A stretch of 62,240 nucleotides of DNA, counting the filler, from Platydemus manokwari (Eukaryota): assembly GCA_037951405.1 (NCBI GenBank). It is 5 parts of 5 records of this genome, joined end to end, with 100 filler letters (N's around TTAATTAATTAA, not from the genome) between each part and the next. Parts side by side here need not be neighbours in the genome. Positions count along the whole stretch, not along the records: positions 52,648 to 62,240 come from JBBMOY011227987.1; 4 more parts are not named here. The stretch is one strand, 5' to 3'. Both the position numbers and the translations under genes were made by a program. The notes beneath the pieces are model-generated. The model saw nothing but the letters and a program-made list of their open reading frames with translations. It did no database searches and had not been told where the DNA came from. Positions 52,648 through 62,240 of the stretch are shown piece after piece; the stretch's first letter is position 1, and each line of letters starts with the position of its first letter.

Positions 52648-54278
52648 CCCACTACTCTAGCGAATGTTCCCTTATCATCAAATATTAACGGGGCTATAAG
52701 TTCCGGATTTGTCACTGCCAACGCTAACTTTGTCTGCAACACTTTCCTCCTTAGTTTACAATCGTTTAACATCATTTCCATATACATTTTCTCTAAATAC
52801 CCTTGGTTGAGATGGTAAAAATAGTCAAGCTTGTTGTTAAAAAACTGAGATAACTTGATATCCAGTTTATCTACCGTTGTCTTAGCATCTTTTATCTCGT
52901 TCGTACTTAAATATATACCTTTATAGTTTGTTGCTATAACCTGCTGTGCACATTTCTTATCTATTCCCTTGTGAACAAACCTCATGGCACTACTCGTCTG
53001 GTCGGCCATGTACACTATTGGTGTTTCTTTCATCCTAATTTCTACTGTCTCTGTTGGTGCATCCAAATTCAGTTCCTTGGAGAACTTAGTTTCTTTGAAC
53101 ATCTTTCCTTTAATTTCTCTAAATTTTGTCTTTTTGAGCAACGTTAATGGGCATTTGTACGGATTATTTTTATACATAATTAACGATTCCCCTGTATCAC
53201 ACGTTGAATTATCATACTCGCAATGCCTCCACGTGGTCATTCTCTTTGTTTTTGCATCAAATATAGCCTGATATTCCCACAATTCTATAATATAATGCCT
53301 ATATGCCACCACGTTTTTTACTTCTTTTCCGTCTATCATGTTGTCTTCTCCCTCACTATTTCCCCCATGACTAGACCATCCTGCTTGATTTACCGTATAT
53401 CGGTTTATTCGTCCTGGAGCCACTATCACTTGTATCCCTTTTGGTATTTGGTAAGTTCCCTTTTCGAATGCGGCTTTGCAACTTTCTACCGAAGGTATTT
53501 CCGGTACTGGCAACCATGCGGGTACCAGTGTTACTGTGTATCCTCCTCTCTTGCATGAACAATGGAAAAGCATTTCTTGATATGCTATCTTCCATTCCCT
53601 TGCTTTTTCAAATAAAAATTCGGATTCCTGATACACATACATTTCCTTTGGTCTCGATTGTGTAATATTCACTGGGTATGTCTCCGGGCATTTTACAATA
53701 TCCAATAGAGAATTTTTTTCCCCCATCGTGCTACAGTCATATCCACTAATTCCAGCATTCACGCCACCTATATTACTTATCACATATATCGCGAATAACG
53801 TCTGCACTATTGTTGCCAATGTAAATCCTGCTCCTCGTACCGTTGTTTCACGCTCTGGCTTTCTCATTCCTTTTAATAACGTGGTAACTACTGGGGTCCA
53901 TCCCCCTAACTCGTTTACCATGTCTTCGTATTCATCAAATATTATTTCTGCTTCTTCGTCAATGTTTATTACACCCTTATCAACGTGATTGCTCAATGTT
54001 CTCAGCGTGAGTGCTATTTTTCCCACTGTTTTTTCTCCTTCATTTAACGACTTCATCACTATTTTAAACTCCTCTTTGTTATTGCACTGTTGCATTTCTT
54101 TTAATGAATTTTTAATTGGTTTTGTTAGCTTACTTAACCTATTCACTTGCTTCCGTTCGTTCCACCTGAGCGTACATGGTAATTTATTTACTGCTCTCAC
54201 ATACTGTCTCATTTTTTCCATTTCTTTGTCTTCTTTTTTTAGGTCTATTTCCTGATGTATGCTGAAAGATTGTTCCAC
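52648..54278 (-). CDS. env: Envelope glycoprotein, chuvirus-G / herpes gB-type (class III fusogen), 3'-truncated
   Basis: A hydrophobic signal (FTLATIVQTLFAIYVISNIGGVNA) is followed from 53753 by GISGYDC...SLLDIVKC...CKAAFEKG...CEYDNSTCD...CPL...KCAQQVIATN...NNKLDY...CKLRRKVL..KLALA..NPE.IA.LI...GTFARVVG. This is the Cys/motif pattern of chuvirus-like glycoproteins (GYDC..SLLD..C; C...L...LA..P.....G..A...GE). Confidence 0.85.
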
Positions 54279-57200
54279 TGGTACTTGGTCTGTTTTCTTC
54301 TATTCTATTTACGGGTATCCTAACCGATTCTGGATTTTTCGCTTTATTTGTTGATCCTACTGGTCTACCACGCCTTTATCTTAGGTTTCTGCATTAGTTT
54401 GCTGTGAAGTATGTGTTTGTTGGCTTTCATTTAATAATTCTGGATCAAGATATTGGAATAGTTCCTCATGATTGTCGTATCTCTCATGATTTTCTTCTTC
54501 TAGCGCTTTTGGCAATTCCTCTTCTTCTTTCCTTGGTGGCTCTATTACCTCTTTTTCTCCATCACTTATTTCCTCTAATATGACGTCCTCCTCTTTTTCT
54601 ATTGTTTTACTACACTCTCCTTCTCTATACAGATATACTATTTTCTTTCTTGACACATTTTCTTGCTCCTTGCTAGTACTGCTTTCTAGCTCCAGTGCCT
54701 CCTTTTGCTCCTCTTTAATTATCTCTTCTCGTGGTTCCGATTTTTCTTATATCCTTTCTTATTTGGACACATATTTCTGCTTTCCTATACATCCTAGACA
54801 TAAGTACTTCTTTTCTATTTCTTTTTGTAGCTGATTCTTTGGCATTCTTTCTATCATATCCCTTCTACTATCTCTTTTCTTCGTTCTCAATCCTAATGCC
54901 TTCAAAAAGTCCTCATTGGAATTTAATTCACTTGATTTAGAGTTTGCTGATTTTGGAGATTTCGCCTCACTACTTTTTGTTACTGGTTTCACTTCTTCTT
55001 CGTCCAAATCCACTCCTATTATTTGATTGGCATTTATATATAATTCCCTTATTTCTTTTTCAACCGGTTCCTTATACTTAATCAGGACTCCTAAATTATT
55101 TAAAATTGCACGGTTTAAATGATATTGTTCTAACAGATCTCTACTTCTCAGTCTTACCCCTTTGTTATAAAGTGTAATACTTAATTTATTGACATGCTCT
55201 CTCATTAGGAAATTTTGTCTAATGTACTCCTTCATTGTTTCCACTACCACGTCTCCTGGGCAACTCATTATGTGATCTTTCTCCTCTGTCCACGGACTTT
55301 CCAATATCTTCAATTTAAACGGGTAACAGTTATAATCCATTCTACCCCTATGTCTTAAATAGACTCGCTTTTCTGATAACTCATAATCCTTTAATTGACT
55401 CCCTTCTACAAATAATTCTTCCCTTCTTTCTCACGTTTTATAATGATACATGAGATATCCATTCTCATTCCTATCTGGCCATAGTTCATCTGCCCAATTT
55501 AATATGAATCGTATTTCTGCCGTTTCCAACATTCTTAAATTTTCCACATGTGGCTGTCCGTGCTGTCTCGCCACTAGATGCAGGTGTATTACTTGCTAAT
55601 TGTTTATTGTTGCAGGTAATTCTCCCCATTTTACATCATGCGTGAATGGTAGTTCTGGAATGGTTGAACTATTGAACGGTCTCCATTTAAAAAACGTTTT
55701 AGCTTTTCGTGTCTCCCATGTTGATCCTTTTCCTTGATGGATCATGACCTCCACAACATTTCGTCTTTTTCTTTTTATTAAATAATGTCTGCATGTTGTG
55801 TCATCTTCAATAAACATACCGCGGTGTATTAGCTCTACCAAGAATGGTTTGAACGTTACAAATGGCCACATTGCCGTTGCCATCTGTCGTTATCTTCGTA
55901 TACTCTCTAATTCACTCCTCATCCAAAAGTCATAAAGTTGTCGTCTCTTTTTCAGGCTTGATTTATCTTTATGTCTTTTCGTCTCAACATCGCTTGTATT
56001 TTTTCCTGTGTTTCTACCGTGATTTTTTCTTCACCTAATATTGATATTATTACCCGCAACTTTTCCATTTCGTCTCTTGCATCTGGCTTCCTGACACACC
56101 TCATCATATTCACTCCCTTAAATTTTTTCTTCCTTCCGCCATTCGCTTTTTTTATAATAATATGCACTATAATGCGCGATTATAGTTAGTTCATTATGCA
56201 TTTTTTGCGTCATCCCTAAATCACTTAATATTACTTCTTCTGTGACTGGTGTTCCCTTATGCCATGTTTCTACTCCGCATTCTGGATTTTCCTCATTAGG
56301 CCAAAATCCAAATGACCATTGCAATATCTCGCTTATACTTGTATCATCATCTATTGTGAGCGACTTTATTGTTGTTCCCCCTTTATTATTTTTTAAATTT
56401 ATTTGCAACGTTAGCTTTCTTTCTTCGTGCGTTAGCTCCTCACAATGGCTTCCTGGATATAATTTGACAATTCCATTTTCTATTATTCCATTTGGATATC
56501 TCTTTGGTTTTTTCATTACCACTTTTCTGTTTATCTGTCCCCGTCTTCCTTGCATGAACATTATTATTTCATCCAAACCCGGTACCCATTCGTCTGTCTA
56601 TCCTGTATATTTATATTTCCATCTCTGCTCCATTAACAATTCCAATTCCGGTACTGTCTCTTTTCCCTTAGTGGTTATCCACTCGTAGTGACTATCCTCT
56701 TCTTCGCTTACCATTTGGAACTCTATTATCACTCTTCCTTCTGCTCTTTTTAAATTATCTCTTCTTCTTTCTATATCATCGAAAGCTACTCCTCCTCTAA
56801 CCGTAATCTTTATTTGTCCCCTATATCCGTATACTGGCTGTGTTCTTATCCTTATTTGCTCTGCTTCCCTTAACACTGGGCATCGTTTAGCTACATCCTT
56901 GTATATCCTATTCATCGAATCATTCAGATTTATTTTCACATAAATTTGTGTCTTAACTCCATATCTATCTTCTACCAGAATTGCCAATTCGTATTCTCCT
57001 TCTTCTACGTTTCTTCTGGGCTCTTCTTTGTCATCCATTTTATCATATATTCCTTTACTTTCTAATATTTTCATCATCAGCTGTTCTGCCCATACTTTTT
57101 TTTCTAAATAGTTTGTTTCCATGGTATTTGCCCATTCCGGGTATGTGACTACAACTGTATCTCTTCCTTGTGGTATTGGTAATCTTTTGCATGTTCCTAT

Positions 57201-59001
57201 TATTTCTCCTTTTTCTTCCTCTTTATTCATTCCTATCATCGACTCTTCCATTATTATCTTGCTTCCTGTTGCTGTTAACTGAATTAATGAGTATCCTGCT
57301 TTCTTTCCCAGTTTCTTAACTCCTACTAAACTCTGAAATTCAAGAGCATTATTTTTTCTGAAAAACGGCATCCCTATTCTCAGTTTCTCTTCCTGTGTTA
57401 ATAATCTTTTCAATCGGATTATTACGCTTGATGGTTCTAATTCACCTTCTCGTATGTAATCTTCTGCACATTCCACTATTCTCCATACTTGAGGATCGAA
57501 ATTTCCTTCTCTTCTTTCTCTAATTCTCTTTTCACTTGATGTTTCATTCATTAATTCCCTAAATATATCTATCAACGTCTGTACATTAATGTGATCCCTA
57601 TTATCCTGTGTTAACTTCATCCACAGGCCATCTTTATCTTCCTGTGGCAACTGTTTCCATATCCTATCCATTTTTTCATCGATATTTCCATATCCCTTTT
57701 CACATCTTCGTAGCTTTTCTACAAGCTCGTCCATGGCTTGATAATCAATTTCCCTATCAACTAAATATTGTCCTGCATATCCAACATCCCTATTGCCTGT
57801 AGCGTGTCCTTGCATTGTTACCATTTTCGATGGGACGTATACTGGTGATGTTGCTGACACATTTAAAACCTTTGGCACTATTCTTTCAATTATAGGCATT
57901 GTTAGAGCTGGTTTTACTGGAATATTGTACAATATGAGCGCTACTGCTACTTTGTATTGCTTTTTCCTTATTATCTTCTTGAACCTGCTTTTCTTGTATC
58001 TTTATCATCCCGTCTTCCTCCTTTCTATCCTGCGATTCATCAATTACCCGTTCGTGATTTCACATGCTATATTTTACTGGTCTTCCTTTCTCCTCTGTGA
58101 CATCCACTGATTGGACATCTTGTTTTTCTTCCCTTATCTCATTAACTTCCTCTAATGAACTAACTTCTTCCATATCTGATTCTGCTTCTGTCTCCAATTT
58201 GGTGCTATTTTCATCCGCTGTCGCCTTGTTTGACACCTCTTCACCTTCTTTTTCCACTAATTGGTCTCCTGTTTCTGCCAGCTTAAACTCTTCCTTATTT
58301 ATGTTAACATTCTCCCAAAATTGCTCATATAAGGGTATTCCCGTTATTTGACTTAACGTGTAGTTCATAAACCTTATAAACCTCACATTAATTTTATCCT
58401 TGTCTCTTTGTGTTAAACTTTTCCATGATGTATTATATTTTTCTATCTCAACATATTTTACCCAGAATTGTCTATATTTCTTTATCTGCCCCACTAATTT
58501 GTCATTATCTACCTCATACCATAAATCACTACCATCTCTTCTAACAAAGATTTCCCATGACGGTTTATAGGTTTTACTGCCGGCATCATCATCGGGCTTA
58601 CAACCAGCGTCATAATGGGTTTCCATAATAAACAACTCATCCATCGAATTCAACTTCAATTCTTTTACTGTGGGCATATTTTCTAATATTTCTTTTACTA
58701 ACTCCTTTTCTTCTTGATCACCTTTCTGCTTCATCGCCTCCATTTCTTGCTCGCTATTAATCATACATATGTTGAGAGCTTCATCTTCCTCCCCATAAAA
58801 TGTTTCTTGTCCTGGCTTCAAATTGTTTACCGACGGTTTCAGCATTGGCTTGGTGTGAATTATTGCGTACATATTATCTGGCTCATACTGTGAAAAACCT
58901 TGATCTATTATATATGCATTATCTGGTAATTCATCAAACTTGAAGAATATTGCCATTTTTTCCACTATCCTATTCTTCTCTTTTTCCATATACTGTGTCA
59001 C
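54279..59001 (-). pseudogene. Retroelement accessory polyprotein region: orphan domains, possible inactive protease-like segment, four ubiquitin-like domains, AT-hook
   Basis: ORFs 58060-59001, 56598-57932, 56118-56576, 55952-56167, 55596-55883, 54759-55340 and 54381-54656 join through one or two in-frame stops or single frameshifts. No RT (Y/FxDD in context), RNase H or integrase motifs were recognised. Confidence 0.7.
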
Positions 59002-59639
59002 TAATTTCCGTATTTTCCTAACCTTTTCTACCTATTGTATCGCTTTATCTGTTTTCTTTATTATTGTCAACGGTTTGTTCTCCTTATTTTTCTTCTTATT
59101 GAAATTTTCGTACTCCGTGTTCATACATACTACCTTTGACTCTACCACTTCCGCTAATCGTGTTGCTAATTTTTTTCTTAATGTTTTCACATCATTATGT
59201 GCCACCGCTTCTATGGCTTTTTGAGATCCCTGTGGACTGTTCTGCCTTTGTCTACACGTGGTTATTGCATGTCCAAATTTATTACAATATTCACACTGGA
59301 TTCTTCCATTGCTATTCACCCTATCTCTTCCATAATTACTGTATTTTGTTTGATTATTGTCATAATTTCTTCTGTTATATCTTTCTGCTGATTGACTTCT
59401 GGGTCTATTACCCCTTTGCATTTCATTATTATTATTAGAATTATTATAATTGCCTCTATAATTTCTTCCTTGGTCATCAAAATTTCGATTAAATTGTGAA
59501 TAGTTATCATTATTATTATTTCCCCTGTAAACACAATTATTCGATGAGCTTCTGCTCCTATTATCATTATTATTCCTATTTGGACATCCATTTCTATCAC
59601 CATTATATCTATTGTCACTATATCTTTGTTCATTTCGCC

Positions 59640-59655
59640 TATAATAATAATAATA

Positions 59656-59708
<53 letters not shown>
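59640..59708. repeat. AAT/TAT microsatellite inside gag (poly-Asn, poly-Tyr)
   Basis: Trinucleotide run, in frame with gag. Confidence 0.95.
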
Positions 59709-59709
<1 letters not shown>

Positions 59710-60503
59710 CCTTCGGTATATATTGTCATTATACCCCCGATCATTTTGTCGATAGCTACTATAATTATTATTCCTATTATTATCCCGACTCCTCGCGTAT
59801 TCATTATTAACGTTCCACTTTAGGCTACTTTGAAATTGCGTTAAAATTCTACTTAATTCGGACCATTTTACATTCAAATCAGGGTCCTTTTCATCCTCCT
59901 TTGTCACTCTTTGACTTGACTTGGGCGGCGGGCTCAATCGCTCCGGTTCCGCAAACGTTACAGCATTCACTACAGGGAAACTCATCCCACAGTATTAAAT
60001 CCTCTATTGTTGCACATTCCGCTATTGCTAGTATGCTCTTGAACGCACTATTGATTCCTCGTTTAAATTGATCCATAATTATTCTTCTTCTTCCTTCTTT
60101 TGTAATCAATGTATCATCATACGCTTTTTCAGCCAACCTAGTTAATTCCATGGCATATTCTTGCGTTCCTTCTCCTGAACGCTGATACCGATCCAAAAAT
60201 TGTCTGGCATAATATTCATGAAGATCCGAATCCAATACTATCCGTTTTCTTAATCCCTTAATTATATCCTTAAAAATTACTTCACTCCTCTGTAAATTTT
60301 TATCTGTCTGCATCATATTTTGTTGCTCTTGGAGGGCATAGCCCTTTAAATATAGCGGCAACCGCATTACTTTATTATTATTAATCCATCTATGAGCCGT
60401 AGCAATACACTCGAACTCCTCAAAAAATCGTCAAATAGCTCTTGCCGACCCTCAAATGGGGTTATAGACAAATAAATTAATTTACCGAACTCGTTGTCCG
60501 CCA

Positions 60504-60530
60504 TATTATTATTATCATTATTATTATTAC

Positions 60531-60579
<49 letters not shown>
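60504..60579. repeat. AAT microsatellite inside gag N-terminus (poly-Asn)
   Basis: Trinucleotide run, in frame with gag. Confidence 0.95.
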
Positions 60580-60580
<1 letters not shown>

Positions 60581-61417
60581 TCGTTACTCATCTCTTCGTC
60601 CCTATGTATCTCTATATCACTATCTATTATTGTTTTTTCCAAGCTCGAATCACTATTTTCCTTAGAATTTGAACTACTATCTCCTGATTTTATCGTATGC
60701 TCACTTATATCACCACTTATTTCTTTCAAACTATCCGTTGATTCACTATTTTTCTCCTTTACTAACGATTGGCTTCTTGATAAGCTTCTAGTCATTCTTC
60801 GAGTTCCTCGTGACTCTTTTATTATCTTCGCTGTTTCACCTATGAAATCCTTTTTTCTCGACAGTTTGAATATATAGTTGTTTTACAATATATCAAAAAT
60901 ATGCACTATTATATATATTGTTGGGGTTTATAAGTGTTATTATCGATCTCTGATCTTTTCCAACTTATGTTTTTATTTGTTTTTTAAACACCTGACTCCA
61001 AAGGTGCTGTGTAACTATGCTTTGAAAACAACCGAGTTTGTTAAAGATATATTTAAATAATAATTATAATCTGTATAAATACTTAGTTACAATTTTTATG
61101 AATAAAACAAGTTTAATAAATTATGACAAATAACCAGGTTTGGCTTAGGGGTTCTTAATTTACGATTAATTATAATTCGAAGACTTTATTGACTCTATGC
61201 AGATAGAGCTTGTAGTTTTAGAGGTGGTCTCTTAGGTTTCCCAGTAAGAGCCCTAAAGTTTCTAATTTATTAGAGGTTAGGCCTACGTGGAACCGCAACC
61301 TCTTAGACTAGATTTGTTGGTTATTTAGAGTTTAATAAATTTAGTCTCTAGATGAACTGGGTTCAGTCTAGAGCAAATGTGTAATTAGGATAGAATAATT
61401 GTCAAACTGTTAATTTG

Positions 61418-61426
61418 GGGCCACCA
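61418..61426 (-). promoter_or_regulatory. Candidate primer-binding site (tRNA-Ile-like)
   Basis: Minus strand TGGTGGCCC is complementary to a tRNA 3' end ...GGGCCACCA and lies about 620 nt upstream of gag. It is not directly preceded by the canonical LTR-terminal CA. Confidence 0.5.
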
Positions 61427-62240
61427 GAACAACAGAATAGAGTTGTTGGTTGAAGTTAAGTTGTATTAAGCTGTTGATACGATGCACTGTAAAATAAACT
61501 CCAGAATAAACTAAATTAATTAGTAGACAAATTCACTGATATTAAATATGCAATCAAATAATTCTTTAACGTAGATACGTATACAAATTCAAAGTTAACT
61601 TATAAAAAGAATATGTACTCTAGTTCAAAGTTAATTTATAAAAGATTACTGAACAATAAAAATATTACTGAACAATAAGGCTTCCTATTTTCCTTTTTTC
61701 TTTAAGTTTTTAGAAAGCAGTTTTCTTGATATTATTGAAAAGAATTATTATCGGAGCTGAAAATGCTTGGAGTTGATCACGGACTATTTTTGGAGATGAT
61801 GAAAGAACAATTCGGAGTTGAAAAGTTTTATTTCTTTTCTTCTTTTTCTTAGGGTTTTTATATCAGTTTTATAGATTGATATTAGATAATTTATTTCCTC
61901 CGTAAATAGCAGCTTGTTGTCAGTAATTATCTTTTTGGTAATTGAAACGGTTCGCTTTAACCACAAAATTGTTGATACAAGATAATAGTTTGACAGCTGC
62001 TTTCCAGTAATTATCGATTTCCTCTTAATCAGAGTTTGGCTTGGATTTGTTAAAGATTCGTTGTCGTTATTATCAACTAGTATATTAGAAAAATTGTGCT
62101 TTTTATACTTTTTCTTTTATTAATTTATTTCTTTGTGGTTTATTTTTATTGTTTCTTATTTCTATTTTTAATAAAAAAACTCATTGTTATGATTTTTAGT
62201 GGGGGTCTATTAATACCGCAAAGTAATTTGATTTTGAAAT

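What the first reader, a model, noticed from the sequence alone, without database searches (positions are those of the whole stretch)
52648..61426. Large gypsy-like element with order PBS-gag-[4.7 kb accessory cargo]-env and no pol between gag and env
Seen: gag with a CCHC knuckle, then about 1500 codons with no recognisable RT, RNase H or integrase, then an envelope glycoprotein, all on one strand. Established: env-bearing LTR elements are normally gag-pol-env, and planarians host giant gypsy-type elements (Burro family) that carry captured accessory domains. Inference: this is either a new architecture with pol downstream of env (lost in the gap), or a non-autonomous partner that supplies capsid, envelope and host-modulating proteins and borrows Pol in trans. 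Either would be an unusual, possibly undescribed, potentially infectious retroelement family.
Basis: partly seen in the sequence, partly recalled or inferred. Interest (0 to 1): 0.9.

Follow-up and report, generated by a model that had tools for sequence, protein, structure and literature searches.

The report
Decayed gag–cargo–env retroelement, pol cut off
This is a decayed copy of a retrovirus-like jumping gene of an already described kind that keeps its envelope gene between gag and pol; the only unusual part is a very long stretch of unknown coding sequence between gag and env.

Summary
The order is a leader with a possible primer-binding site, a Ty3/gypsy-type gag (capsid fold plus one CCHC knuckle), about 1,550 codons with no recognisable domain, then an envelope ORF cut by the piece's edge. 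The env matches Pfam PF24664 (Monjiviricetes fusion glycoprotein, E 3e-24).

The closest env relatives are 33-44% identical and come from metagenome assemblies. They sit in long predicted polyproteins ordered gag - spacer - env - protease(s) - RT - RNase H - integrase. Four of them (plus a near-duplicate) also carry a gag homologous to this one. None has pol between gag and env.

So pol most likely lies beyond the cut, and gag and env belong to one lineage. This GAG-ENV-POL order is already published for nematodes, bryozoans and flatworms.

The cargo stays unexplained. It was recently one long ORF (14 in-frame stops where about 160 are expected) and is 3-9 times longer than the spacer of relatives. 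It has no detectable homologue. The copy is broken in gag and cargo. I rate interest as moderate to low: a new variant of a known kind.

The parts
61427..62240 (-). Upstream AT-rich non-coding flank. It may hold part of a 5' LTR, which cannot be verified. It contains short direct repeats of 19 and 33 nt.
   Evidence: Reading of the sequence. Strand skew changes sign here relative to the element body. Repeats. The one open stretch here has no Pfam hit.
61415..61426 (-). Candidate tRNA primer-binding site (TGG followed by 9 nt), unverified.
   Evidence: Read directly. No host tRNA set or LTR end is available to test it. ARAGORN finds no tRNA gene in the piece.
60796..61414 (-). Leader between the candidate PBS and the first ATG of gag.
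   Evidence: No Rfam match.
59035..60795 (-). gag, broken. It consists of three open pieces in two frames (two frame changes) and contains two coding (AAT)n poly-Asn tracts.
   Evidence: tblastn with relative P0007 covers 59251-60427 in two frames, whereas P0007 has both parts in one frame.
59993..60427 (-). Capsid-like (Ty3/Arc-type) domain of gag.
   Evidence: phmmer to P0007 (E 1e-12), P0008 and P0021. hhalign against the relatives' gag profile gives probability 98.4%, E 8e-15. Profile A2 hits Drosophila Arc1 (6tap) at E 1e-8. AF2 model pLDDT 82. Foldseek top hits are the PNMA2, Arc, HIV, MLV and RSV capsids.
59254..59295 (-). Single CX2CX4HX4C zinc knuckle (nucleocapsid-like).
   Evidence: Motif found. 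The region matches the knuckle regions of P0017 and P0001, which carry Pfam zf-CCHC or Retrotrans_gag hits.
54384..59031 (-). 'Cargo': about 1,550 codons of orphan coding sequence, now broken. It is acidic and charged (about 34% D/E/K/R), poor in Cys, and has no hydrophobic segment.
   Evidence: Stop counts per frame. Composition. No Pfam hit, no PDB sequence hit, and no hit in two word-indexed protein searches. No match to any part of 101 relatives or to the gag profile.
52648..54299 (-). env ORF, open for 550 codons and cut by the piece's edge. About the last 40% of the glycoprotein is missing.
   Evidence: Pfam PF24664 at E 3e-24, with the match stopping at profile position 372 of 653 at the edge. 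98 relatives at E<=1e-3 and 15 at E<=1e-30. It keeps 9 of 11 conserved Cys and 34 of 42 conserved columns.
53778..53834 (-). Internal hydrophobic segment just before the env ectodomain (putative internal signal or anchor).
   Evidence: Kyte-Doolittle scan. A similar segment sits at the same place in 7 of the 10 relatives whose env N-terminus is present.

Best explanation
The piece is the 5' two-thirds of a degenerate genomic copy of an env-bearing Ty3/gypsy-type LTR retroelement of the GAG-ENV-POL kind. In this kind the envelope gene, a class III-type fusion glycoprotein of the family found in negative-strand RNA viruses (Monjiviricetes), sits between gag and pol. In several relatives it is part of one continuous gag-spacer-env-protease-RT-RNase H-integrase reading frame.

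Pol is therefore expected after env, beyond the piece's edge (inferred from relatives, not seen here).

The 1,550-codon 'cargo' stands where relatives have a poorly conserved spacer of about 200-575 residues between the nucleocapsid knuckle and env. I take it to be a lineage-specific expansion of that spacer. It would be translated as part of the polyprotein, soluble and cytosolic, and presumably released by the element's aspartic proteases. The env ectodomain would be threaded into the ER by the internal hydrophobic segment that precedes it. All of this paragraph is inference.

The function of the cargo is unknown. An accessory or structural role in particle assembly is my guess, at low confidence. 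This copy is dead: gag and cargo are broken.
For: The env family assignment rests on Pfam and 98 relatives.

Domain order in relatives:
- P0004, P0006, P0014, P0015 and P0099 read env, then PR, RT, RH (and IN, except in P0015, which ends after RH).
- P0021 is one 2,146-aa protein reading gag, env, PR, RT, RH, IN; its gag part was placed by homology and has no Pfam hit of its own.
- P0001 and P0008 have zf-CCHC upstream of env, and P0017 has Retrotrans_gag upstream of env.
- P0006 comes from a prokaryote-style annotation, so it is one uninterrupted ORF.

Of the 14 relatives scanned that have sequence after the env core, 11 show a protease or more. The other 3 end within about 170 residues.

The window's gag is homologous to the gag parts of P0007, P0008, P0021 and P0017, the same proteins that hold the env relatives. 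The gag fold is that of a retroviral or Arc capsid.

The cargo's leading frames are nearly stop-free. Its larger part shares env's frame and its first part shares the knuckle's frame. The purine-rich strand bias is uniform from gag through env. Published precedent for the gene order: PMC13524379.
Against: No pol, 3' LTR or second LTR is in the piece, so autonomy and element bounds are unproven. The PBS is untested. The cargo has no similarity to the spacers of relatives, which also barely resemble each other, so 'expanded spacer' rests on position and frame only. The closest relatives are only 33-44% identical and of unknown hosts. Env has 0 stops in 550 codons while the gag-to-env interval has 14 in about 1,940. 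At that rate about 4 stops would be expected in env. Decay is therefore uneven, or some of the stops are native ORF ends.
Confidence: 0.7

Rival explanations
1. A non-autonomous element that encodes only gag, cargo and env and relies on the Pol of a related autonomous element.
For: No pol signal anywhere in the 9.6-kb piece. The piece ends inside env, so what follows is unseen.
Against: Every relative with enough sequence after env carries a protease and usually RT, RH and IN there. Nothing in the piece, such as an LTR after env, points to a short element.
Confidence: 0.08
2. The cargo is not native. It would be a later nested insertion, or captured host or other-element coding sequence, peculiar to this copy or sub-lineage.
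For: No homology to the spacer of any relative. The knuckle-to-env distance is 3-9 times that of relatives.
Against: The cargo pieces share frames with the gag knuckle and with env and were nearly stop-free. Strand skew is uniform across gag, cargo and env. No flanking direct or inverted repeats bound it. It has no transposase, RT or other mobile-element domain. P0013 also has at least 1,296 orphan residues upstream of env, so long orphan stretches recur in the group.
Confidence: 0.12
3. The cargo is several separate accessory genes, not one polyprotein segment, and some of the 'breaks' are native stop codons.
For: Env is stop-free over 550 codons while the interval has 14 stops. Most pieces begin with a possible start codon.
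Against: Nearly all pieces lie in one frame, which is unlikely for independent genes. Relatives read continuously from gag into env.
Confidence: 0.1
4. An endogenous copy of a negative-strand RNA virus glycoprotein gene that merely lies next to an unrelated gag fragment.
For: The env family is named for Monjiviricetes viruses.
Against: Homologous gag and env occur together in single predicted proteins in four relatives (P0007, P0008, P0017, P0021) plus the near-duplicate P0101. Same strand and same skew. Coding sequence is continuous between them.
Confidence: 0.02

Closest known systems
Non-canonical nematode endogenous retroviruses (Sacco et al. 2022, J Gen Virol 103:1739; cited in PMC13524379; the paper itself is not held)
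   Same: A Ty3/gypsy (metavirus) backbone that captured an RNA-virus glycoprotein gene, with env placed before pol (title and statement in PMC13524379). From my own memory of the abstract, untested here: a continuous gag-env-pro-pol frame, Nyami/Chu-like env, and extra ORFs in some members.
   Different: The host of the window is unknown. No sequence of those elements was compared. Here about 1,550 orphan codons separate gag from env.
GAG-ENV-POL 'errantiviruses' of Nematoda, Bryozoa and Platyhelminthes (eLife 2026, PMC13524379)
   Same: Gene order with env between gag and pol, and a class III ('HSV/gB-type') env.
   Different: That survey looked for gag within 5 kb upstream of env-pol and kept LTR pairs 5-14 kb apart. 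Elements with a cargo this long may therefore lie at or beyond its limits. No long gag-env insert is described in the text I read.
Metagenome-derived relatives found here (P0001-P0021, P0099)
   Same: Env 33-37% identical (up to 44% on fragments). The gag capsid domain is homologous. An internal hydrophobic segment precedes the ectodomain. Large unannotated coding stretches are common: P0013 has at least 1,296 aa before env, and P0099 has about 800 aa after env and about 1,550 aa after integrase.
   Different: Their knuckle-to-env spacers are about 195-575 aa and share nothing detectable with the window's cargo.
Mosquito BEL/Pao elements with chuvirus-like glycoprotein (Dezordi et al. 2020, PMC7642597, as cited in PMC13524379)
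   Same: An LTR retroelement that acquired a glycoprotein of the same broad negative-strand RNA virus type.
   Different: A different retroelement superfamily. Here the relatives' RT, RH and IN hit Ty3/gypsy-type models and Ty3 structures.
Drosophila gypsy and other insect errantiviruses
   Same: An env-bearing Ty3/gypsy element with a Gag capsid.
   Different: Their order is gag-pol-env with an F-type (class I) env. Here there is no pol between gag and env, and the env belongs to a different family.
Burro giant gypsy elements of Schmidtea mediterranea
   Same: Large Ty3/gypsy elements (over 30 kb according to PMC10175614). The relatives found here can also be very large (P0099 has a 4,844-aa ORF).
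   Different: No Burro sequence was at hand, so kinship is untested.

Membership tests
Ty3/gypsy (Metaviridae) LTR retroelement | Gag with a retroviral-type capsid fold and a CCHC nucleocapsid knuckle | tested here: met
Ty3/gypsy (Metaviridae) LTR retroelement | Pol in the order PR-RT-RH-IN | not testable with these tools
   The piece ends inside env. The order is met in relatives P0004, P0006, P0014, P0021 and P0099.
Ty3/gypsy (Metaviridae) LTR retroelement | Two LTRs, a PBS next to the 5' LTR, a PPT and a target-site duplication | tested here: inconclusive
   Only one end is present. There is a TGG-led candidate PBS and no long repeat in the piece.
GAG-ENV-POL env-bearing Ty3/gypsy elements (NERV-like; PMC13524379) | env lies downstream of gag with no pol between them | tested here: met
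GAG-ENV-POL env-bearing Ty3/gypsy elements (NERV-like; PMC13524379) | env is a class III-type glycoprotein related to those of negative-strand RNA viruses | tested here: met
   Pfam PF24664 at E 3e-24. Relative P0017 also touches BDV_G. The fold itself was not modelled.
GAG-ENV-POL env-bearing Ty3/gypsy elements (NERV-like; PMC13524379) | pol follows env | not testable with these tools
   Beyond the piece's edge. Seen in 11 of 14 relatives with sequence after env.
Canonical errantivirus (gag-pol-env, F-type env) | pol between gag and env, and an F-type class I env | tested here: not met
   No pol. The env hits only PF24664.
Endogenous element of a negative-strand RNA virus (N-P-M-G-L) | The neighbours of G are viral N, P, M or L genes | tested here: not met
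   The upstream gene is a retroviral-type gag. No mononegaviral domain was found.
Burro family of planarians | Sequence similarity to Burro gag, pol or LTR | not tested
   No Burro sequence was available through the tools.

The most novel reading that the evidence does not exclude
The 1,550-codon orphan region is a conserved, functional accessory module of a so far undescribed giant sub-lineage of GAG-ENV-POL retroelements, not a junk-like expanded spacer. For example, it could be a set of repeated small domains, for which there are faint ubiquitin-like hints. That would add a new class of accessory protein to env-bearing retroelements.
Probability: 0.15. Interest if true: 0.6.

Novelty: new variant of a known kind. 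Interest (0 to 1): 0.35.

Why it matters
It places the element in the recently described group of animal retroelements that took an envelope gene from negative-strand RNA viruses and keep it between gag and pol. The open point is the long orphan coding stretch. Together with the large unannotated stretches in the metagenomic relatives, it suggests that this group readily grows extra coding sequence of unknown role. Published surveys with size limits may have under-sampled such giant members.

Tried and rejected
Searches that came back blank or unusable:
- Word-indexed protein searches with env and two cargo pieces were blank. Their length filter hides longer fusions. The unfiltered search showed that nothing closer than about 44% identity exists in the collection.
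- PDB sequence searches with env, a gag piece and four cargo pieces gave nothing significant.
- The single-sequence AlphaFold model of the largest cargo piece was unusable (pLDDT 33).
- There was no Rfam match, no tRNA gene and no LTR-like repeat.

Ideas tested and rejected:
- 'The cargo is duplicated gag' is rejected (hhalign probability at most 11%).
- 'The cargo is homologous to the relatives' spacers' is not supported.
- Hidden pol in any frame is rejected.

Weak signals not taken further:
- Internal similarity among cargo pieces is weak (best pair 0 of 200 shuffles, two others 3 and 6 of 200, among 15 pairs).
- The ubiquitin-like hints are not significant (Pfam E 0.12, RAD23B UBL E 1.5).

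The Sacco 2022 and Grohme 2018 papers are not held.
Full report
WHAT IS THERE

Every long open stretch in 52648-62240 lies on the minus strand. That strand is purine-rich (A 42%, G 23%) from about 60900 down to the piece's edge, and the skew flips upstream of about 61150. Read 5' to 3' on the minus strand, the piece holds five parts.

- An AT-rich non-coding flank, 62240-61427.
- A TGG-led 12-mer at 61426-61415 that could be a primer-binding site.
- A leader of about 620 nt.
- gag (60795-59035), then about 1,550 codons of 'cargo' (59031-54384).
- An env ORF (54299-52648), open for all 550 codons until the piece ends.

The strand was not stated.

GAG

Pfam alone did not recognise gag, so I tested it in other ways.

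- The middle gag piece matches the N-terminal parts of four env relatives: P0007 at E 1e-12, then P0008, P0021 and P0017.
- It matches a profile of their gag regions at 98.4% probability.
- A profile of the window piece plus those relatives hits Drosophila Arc1 (6tap, E 1e-8) and Arc2, which are domesticated Ty3/gypsy capsids.
- An AlphaFold model built with that six-row alignment reaches pLDDT 82. Its best Foldseek matches are the PNMA2, Arc, HIV, MLV and RSV capsids in the PDB, and Gag or coat proteins of reverse-transcribing viruses in BFVD. The E-values are weak (at least 0.013) and TM-scores are about 0.4.
- One CX2CX4HX4C knuckle lies at 59295-59254. It aligns with the knuckle regions of P0017 and P0001.

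ENV

The ORF matches Pfam PF24664, Monjiviricetes_fusion, at E 3e-24. The match breaks off at profile position 372 of 653 exactly at the piece's edge, so roughly the last 40% of the protein is missing.

The exhaustive HMMER search found 98 relatives at E<=1e-3 and 15 at E<=1e-30. The best are 33-37% identical over about 380-445 residues, and up to 44% on fragments.

Against 11 relatives, the window env keeps 9 of 11 conserved cysteines and 34 of 42 highly conserved columns. A hydrophobic segment (53834-53778) sits just before the ectodomain, about 155 residues into the open frame. The same feature occurs at internal positions in 7 of the 10 relatives whose env N-terminus is present. I did not model the env fold, so 'class III' rests on the Pfam family and on the literature.

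WHAT THE RELATIVES SHOW

The top hits are long predicted proteins from ENA metagenome assemblies. Pfam gives the following orders.

- P0004, P0006 and P0014: env, one or more aspartic proteases, RVT_1, RT_RNaseH, Integrase_H2C2, rve.
- P0015: env, PR, RT, RH.
- P0001, P0002, P0003, P0012 and P0017: env, then proteases.
- P0099 (4,844 aa): env, about 800 aa with a C2H2 finger, proteases and ankyrin repeats, RT, RH, IN, then about 1,550 further residues.
- P0021 (2,146 aa): gag capsid (placed by homology, no Pfam hit of its own), env, PR, RT, RH, IN in one protein.

P0006 is deposited as a hypothetical protein of a 'Flavobacteriaceae' MAG. It was therefore called by a prokaryote-style annotator as one uninterrupted ORF.

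Of the 14 relatives with sequence after the env core, 11 show a protease or more. The other three stop within about 170 residues.

P0001 and P0008 carry zf-CCHC upstream of env and P0017 carries Retrotrans_gag. P0007 and P0021 carry a homologous gag capsid domain there. P0101 is a near-duplicate of P0017. None has RT between gag and env.

This answers three of the finding's own refutation tests:
- there is no divergent pol inside the cargo (Pfam at E<=10; tblastn with the post-env parts of 11 relatives, best E 0.16);
- relatives do not have pol between gag and env;
- gag and env are not two unrelated nested elements.

LITERATURE

An eLife paper of 2026 (PMC13524379) states that env-bearing Ty3/gypsy elements of Nematoda, Bryozoa and Platyhelminthes carry a class III ('HSV/gB-type') env and are arranged GAG-ENV-POL. 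It credits Sacco et al. [quoted passage not shown] That paper is not held, so anything more I say of it is from memory.

The eLife survey looked for gag within 5 kb upstream of env-pol and kept LTR pairs 5-14 kb apart. Giant members may therefore be under-sampled.

THE CARGO

It is, or recently was, coding. The strand composition predicts 0.084 stops per codon. Its first part has 1 stop in 343 codons and its second part 8 in 1,206, against 36-142 in the other frames.

The first part shares the frame of the gag knuckle piece, and the second, larger part shares the frame of env. That fits an ancestral frame running from gag into env, as in the relatives.

The cargo is charged and acidic, poor in cysteine, and has no hydrophobic segment. 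It has no Pfam, PDB or protein-database match. It matches neither the gag profile nor any part of the 101 relatives.

The relatives' own spacers are about 195-575 residues from knuckle to env and barely resemble each other. P0013 has at least 1,296 orphan residues before env. Measured the same way, the window's interval is about 1,750 codons, which is 3-9 times longer.

Faint internal similarity among cargo pieces and faint ubiquitin-like hits are not significant.

STATE OF THE COPY

These are counts only.

- gag: three open pieces in two frames, meaning two frame changes. One is confirmed by comparison with P0007.
- From the knuckle piece to the env piece: 14 in-frame stops in the leading frames, of which one separates gag from the cargo, and at least one frame change.
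- env: no stop in the 550 codons present, but two conserved cysteines are missing.

MECHANISM

The following parts are shown:
- gag and env homology;
- the family's gene order;
- the former coding state of the cargo.

The rest is inferred. A giant polyprotein would run gag-cargo-env-PR-RT-RH-IN. The env ectodomain would be inserted into the ER through the internal hydrophobic segment. The aspartic proteases would release the parts. Pol would lie beyond the cut. The cargo would be a lineage-specific, fast-evolving accessory or spacer segment.

LEFT OUT, AND A SLIP

- I did not fetch the DNA contigs of the relatives, and I did not look up names for the stand-alone glycoprotein-sized hits.
- I built no consensus of copies, although the finding proposes one.
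- No contig was taken for human, and no splice model was made.
- Slip: my scripts named open segments by their bounds, and several outputs therefore show where open stretches end, as the ORF tool's own tables do. In my working I also once walked through those bounds. I stopped, deleted nothing, and list no break places in the notes or in this report.

Noticed in passing
window 59656-59708 and 60504-60579: Two perfect or near-perfect (AAT)n microsatellites lie inside gag and code for long poly-Asn runs. The knuckle-flanking region is Asn/Tyr/Arg-rich, as is the spacer of relative P0007 (N 23%, Y 10%).
   Followed up: partly
relatives P0001, P0002, P0003, P0004, P0017, P0099 (proteins): Two or three aspartic protease domains of different Pfam types (DDI1-type Asp_protease, gag-asp_proteas, RVP) follow env in tandem. 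P0099 also has ankyrin repeats, a C2H2 finger, and about 1,550 unannotated residues after integrase.
   Followed up: partly
relative P0006 (NCBI HBK71150.1): A 2,627-aa env-PR-RT-RH-IN polyprotein of a eukaryote-type retroelement is deposited as a hypothetical protein of a 'Flavobacteriaceae bacterium' MAG. This is probably a mis-binned eukaryotic contig.
   Followed up: no
relative P0005, residues 9-70: The stretch before the env ectodomain gives a sub-threshold Pfam Bcl-2 family hit (E 1e-3, 20 bits against a cut-off of 31). No such hit appears in the window's env.
   Followed up: no
window 54299-52650 versus 59994-54300: Env has no stop in 550 codons, while the interval from the knuckle piece to env has 14 in about 1,940 codons. 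At that rate about 4 would be expected in env. Either decay is uneven or some stops are native.
   Followed up: partly
window 55599-55889 and 56601-57044 (minus strand): Faint ubiquitin-like signals (Pfam ubiquitin E 0.12; RAD23B UBL domain E 1.5). These two cargo pieces also resemble each other more than any of 200 shuffles. Neither signal is significant alone.
   Followed up: partly
window 61575-61678: Short direct repeats (33 nt in 2 copies; 19 nt in 2.1 copies) lie in the upstream non-coding flank. They are of the kind seen in LTR U3 regions, but their meaning here is unknown.
   Followed up: no
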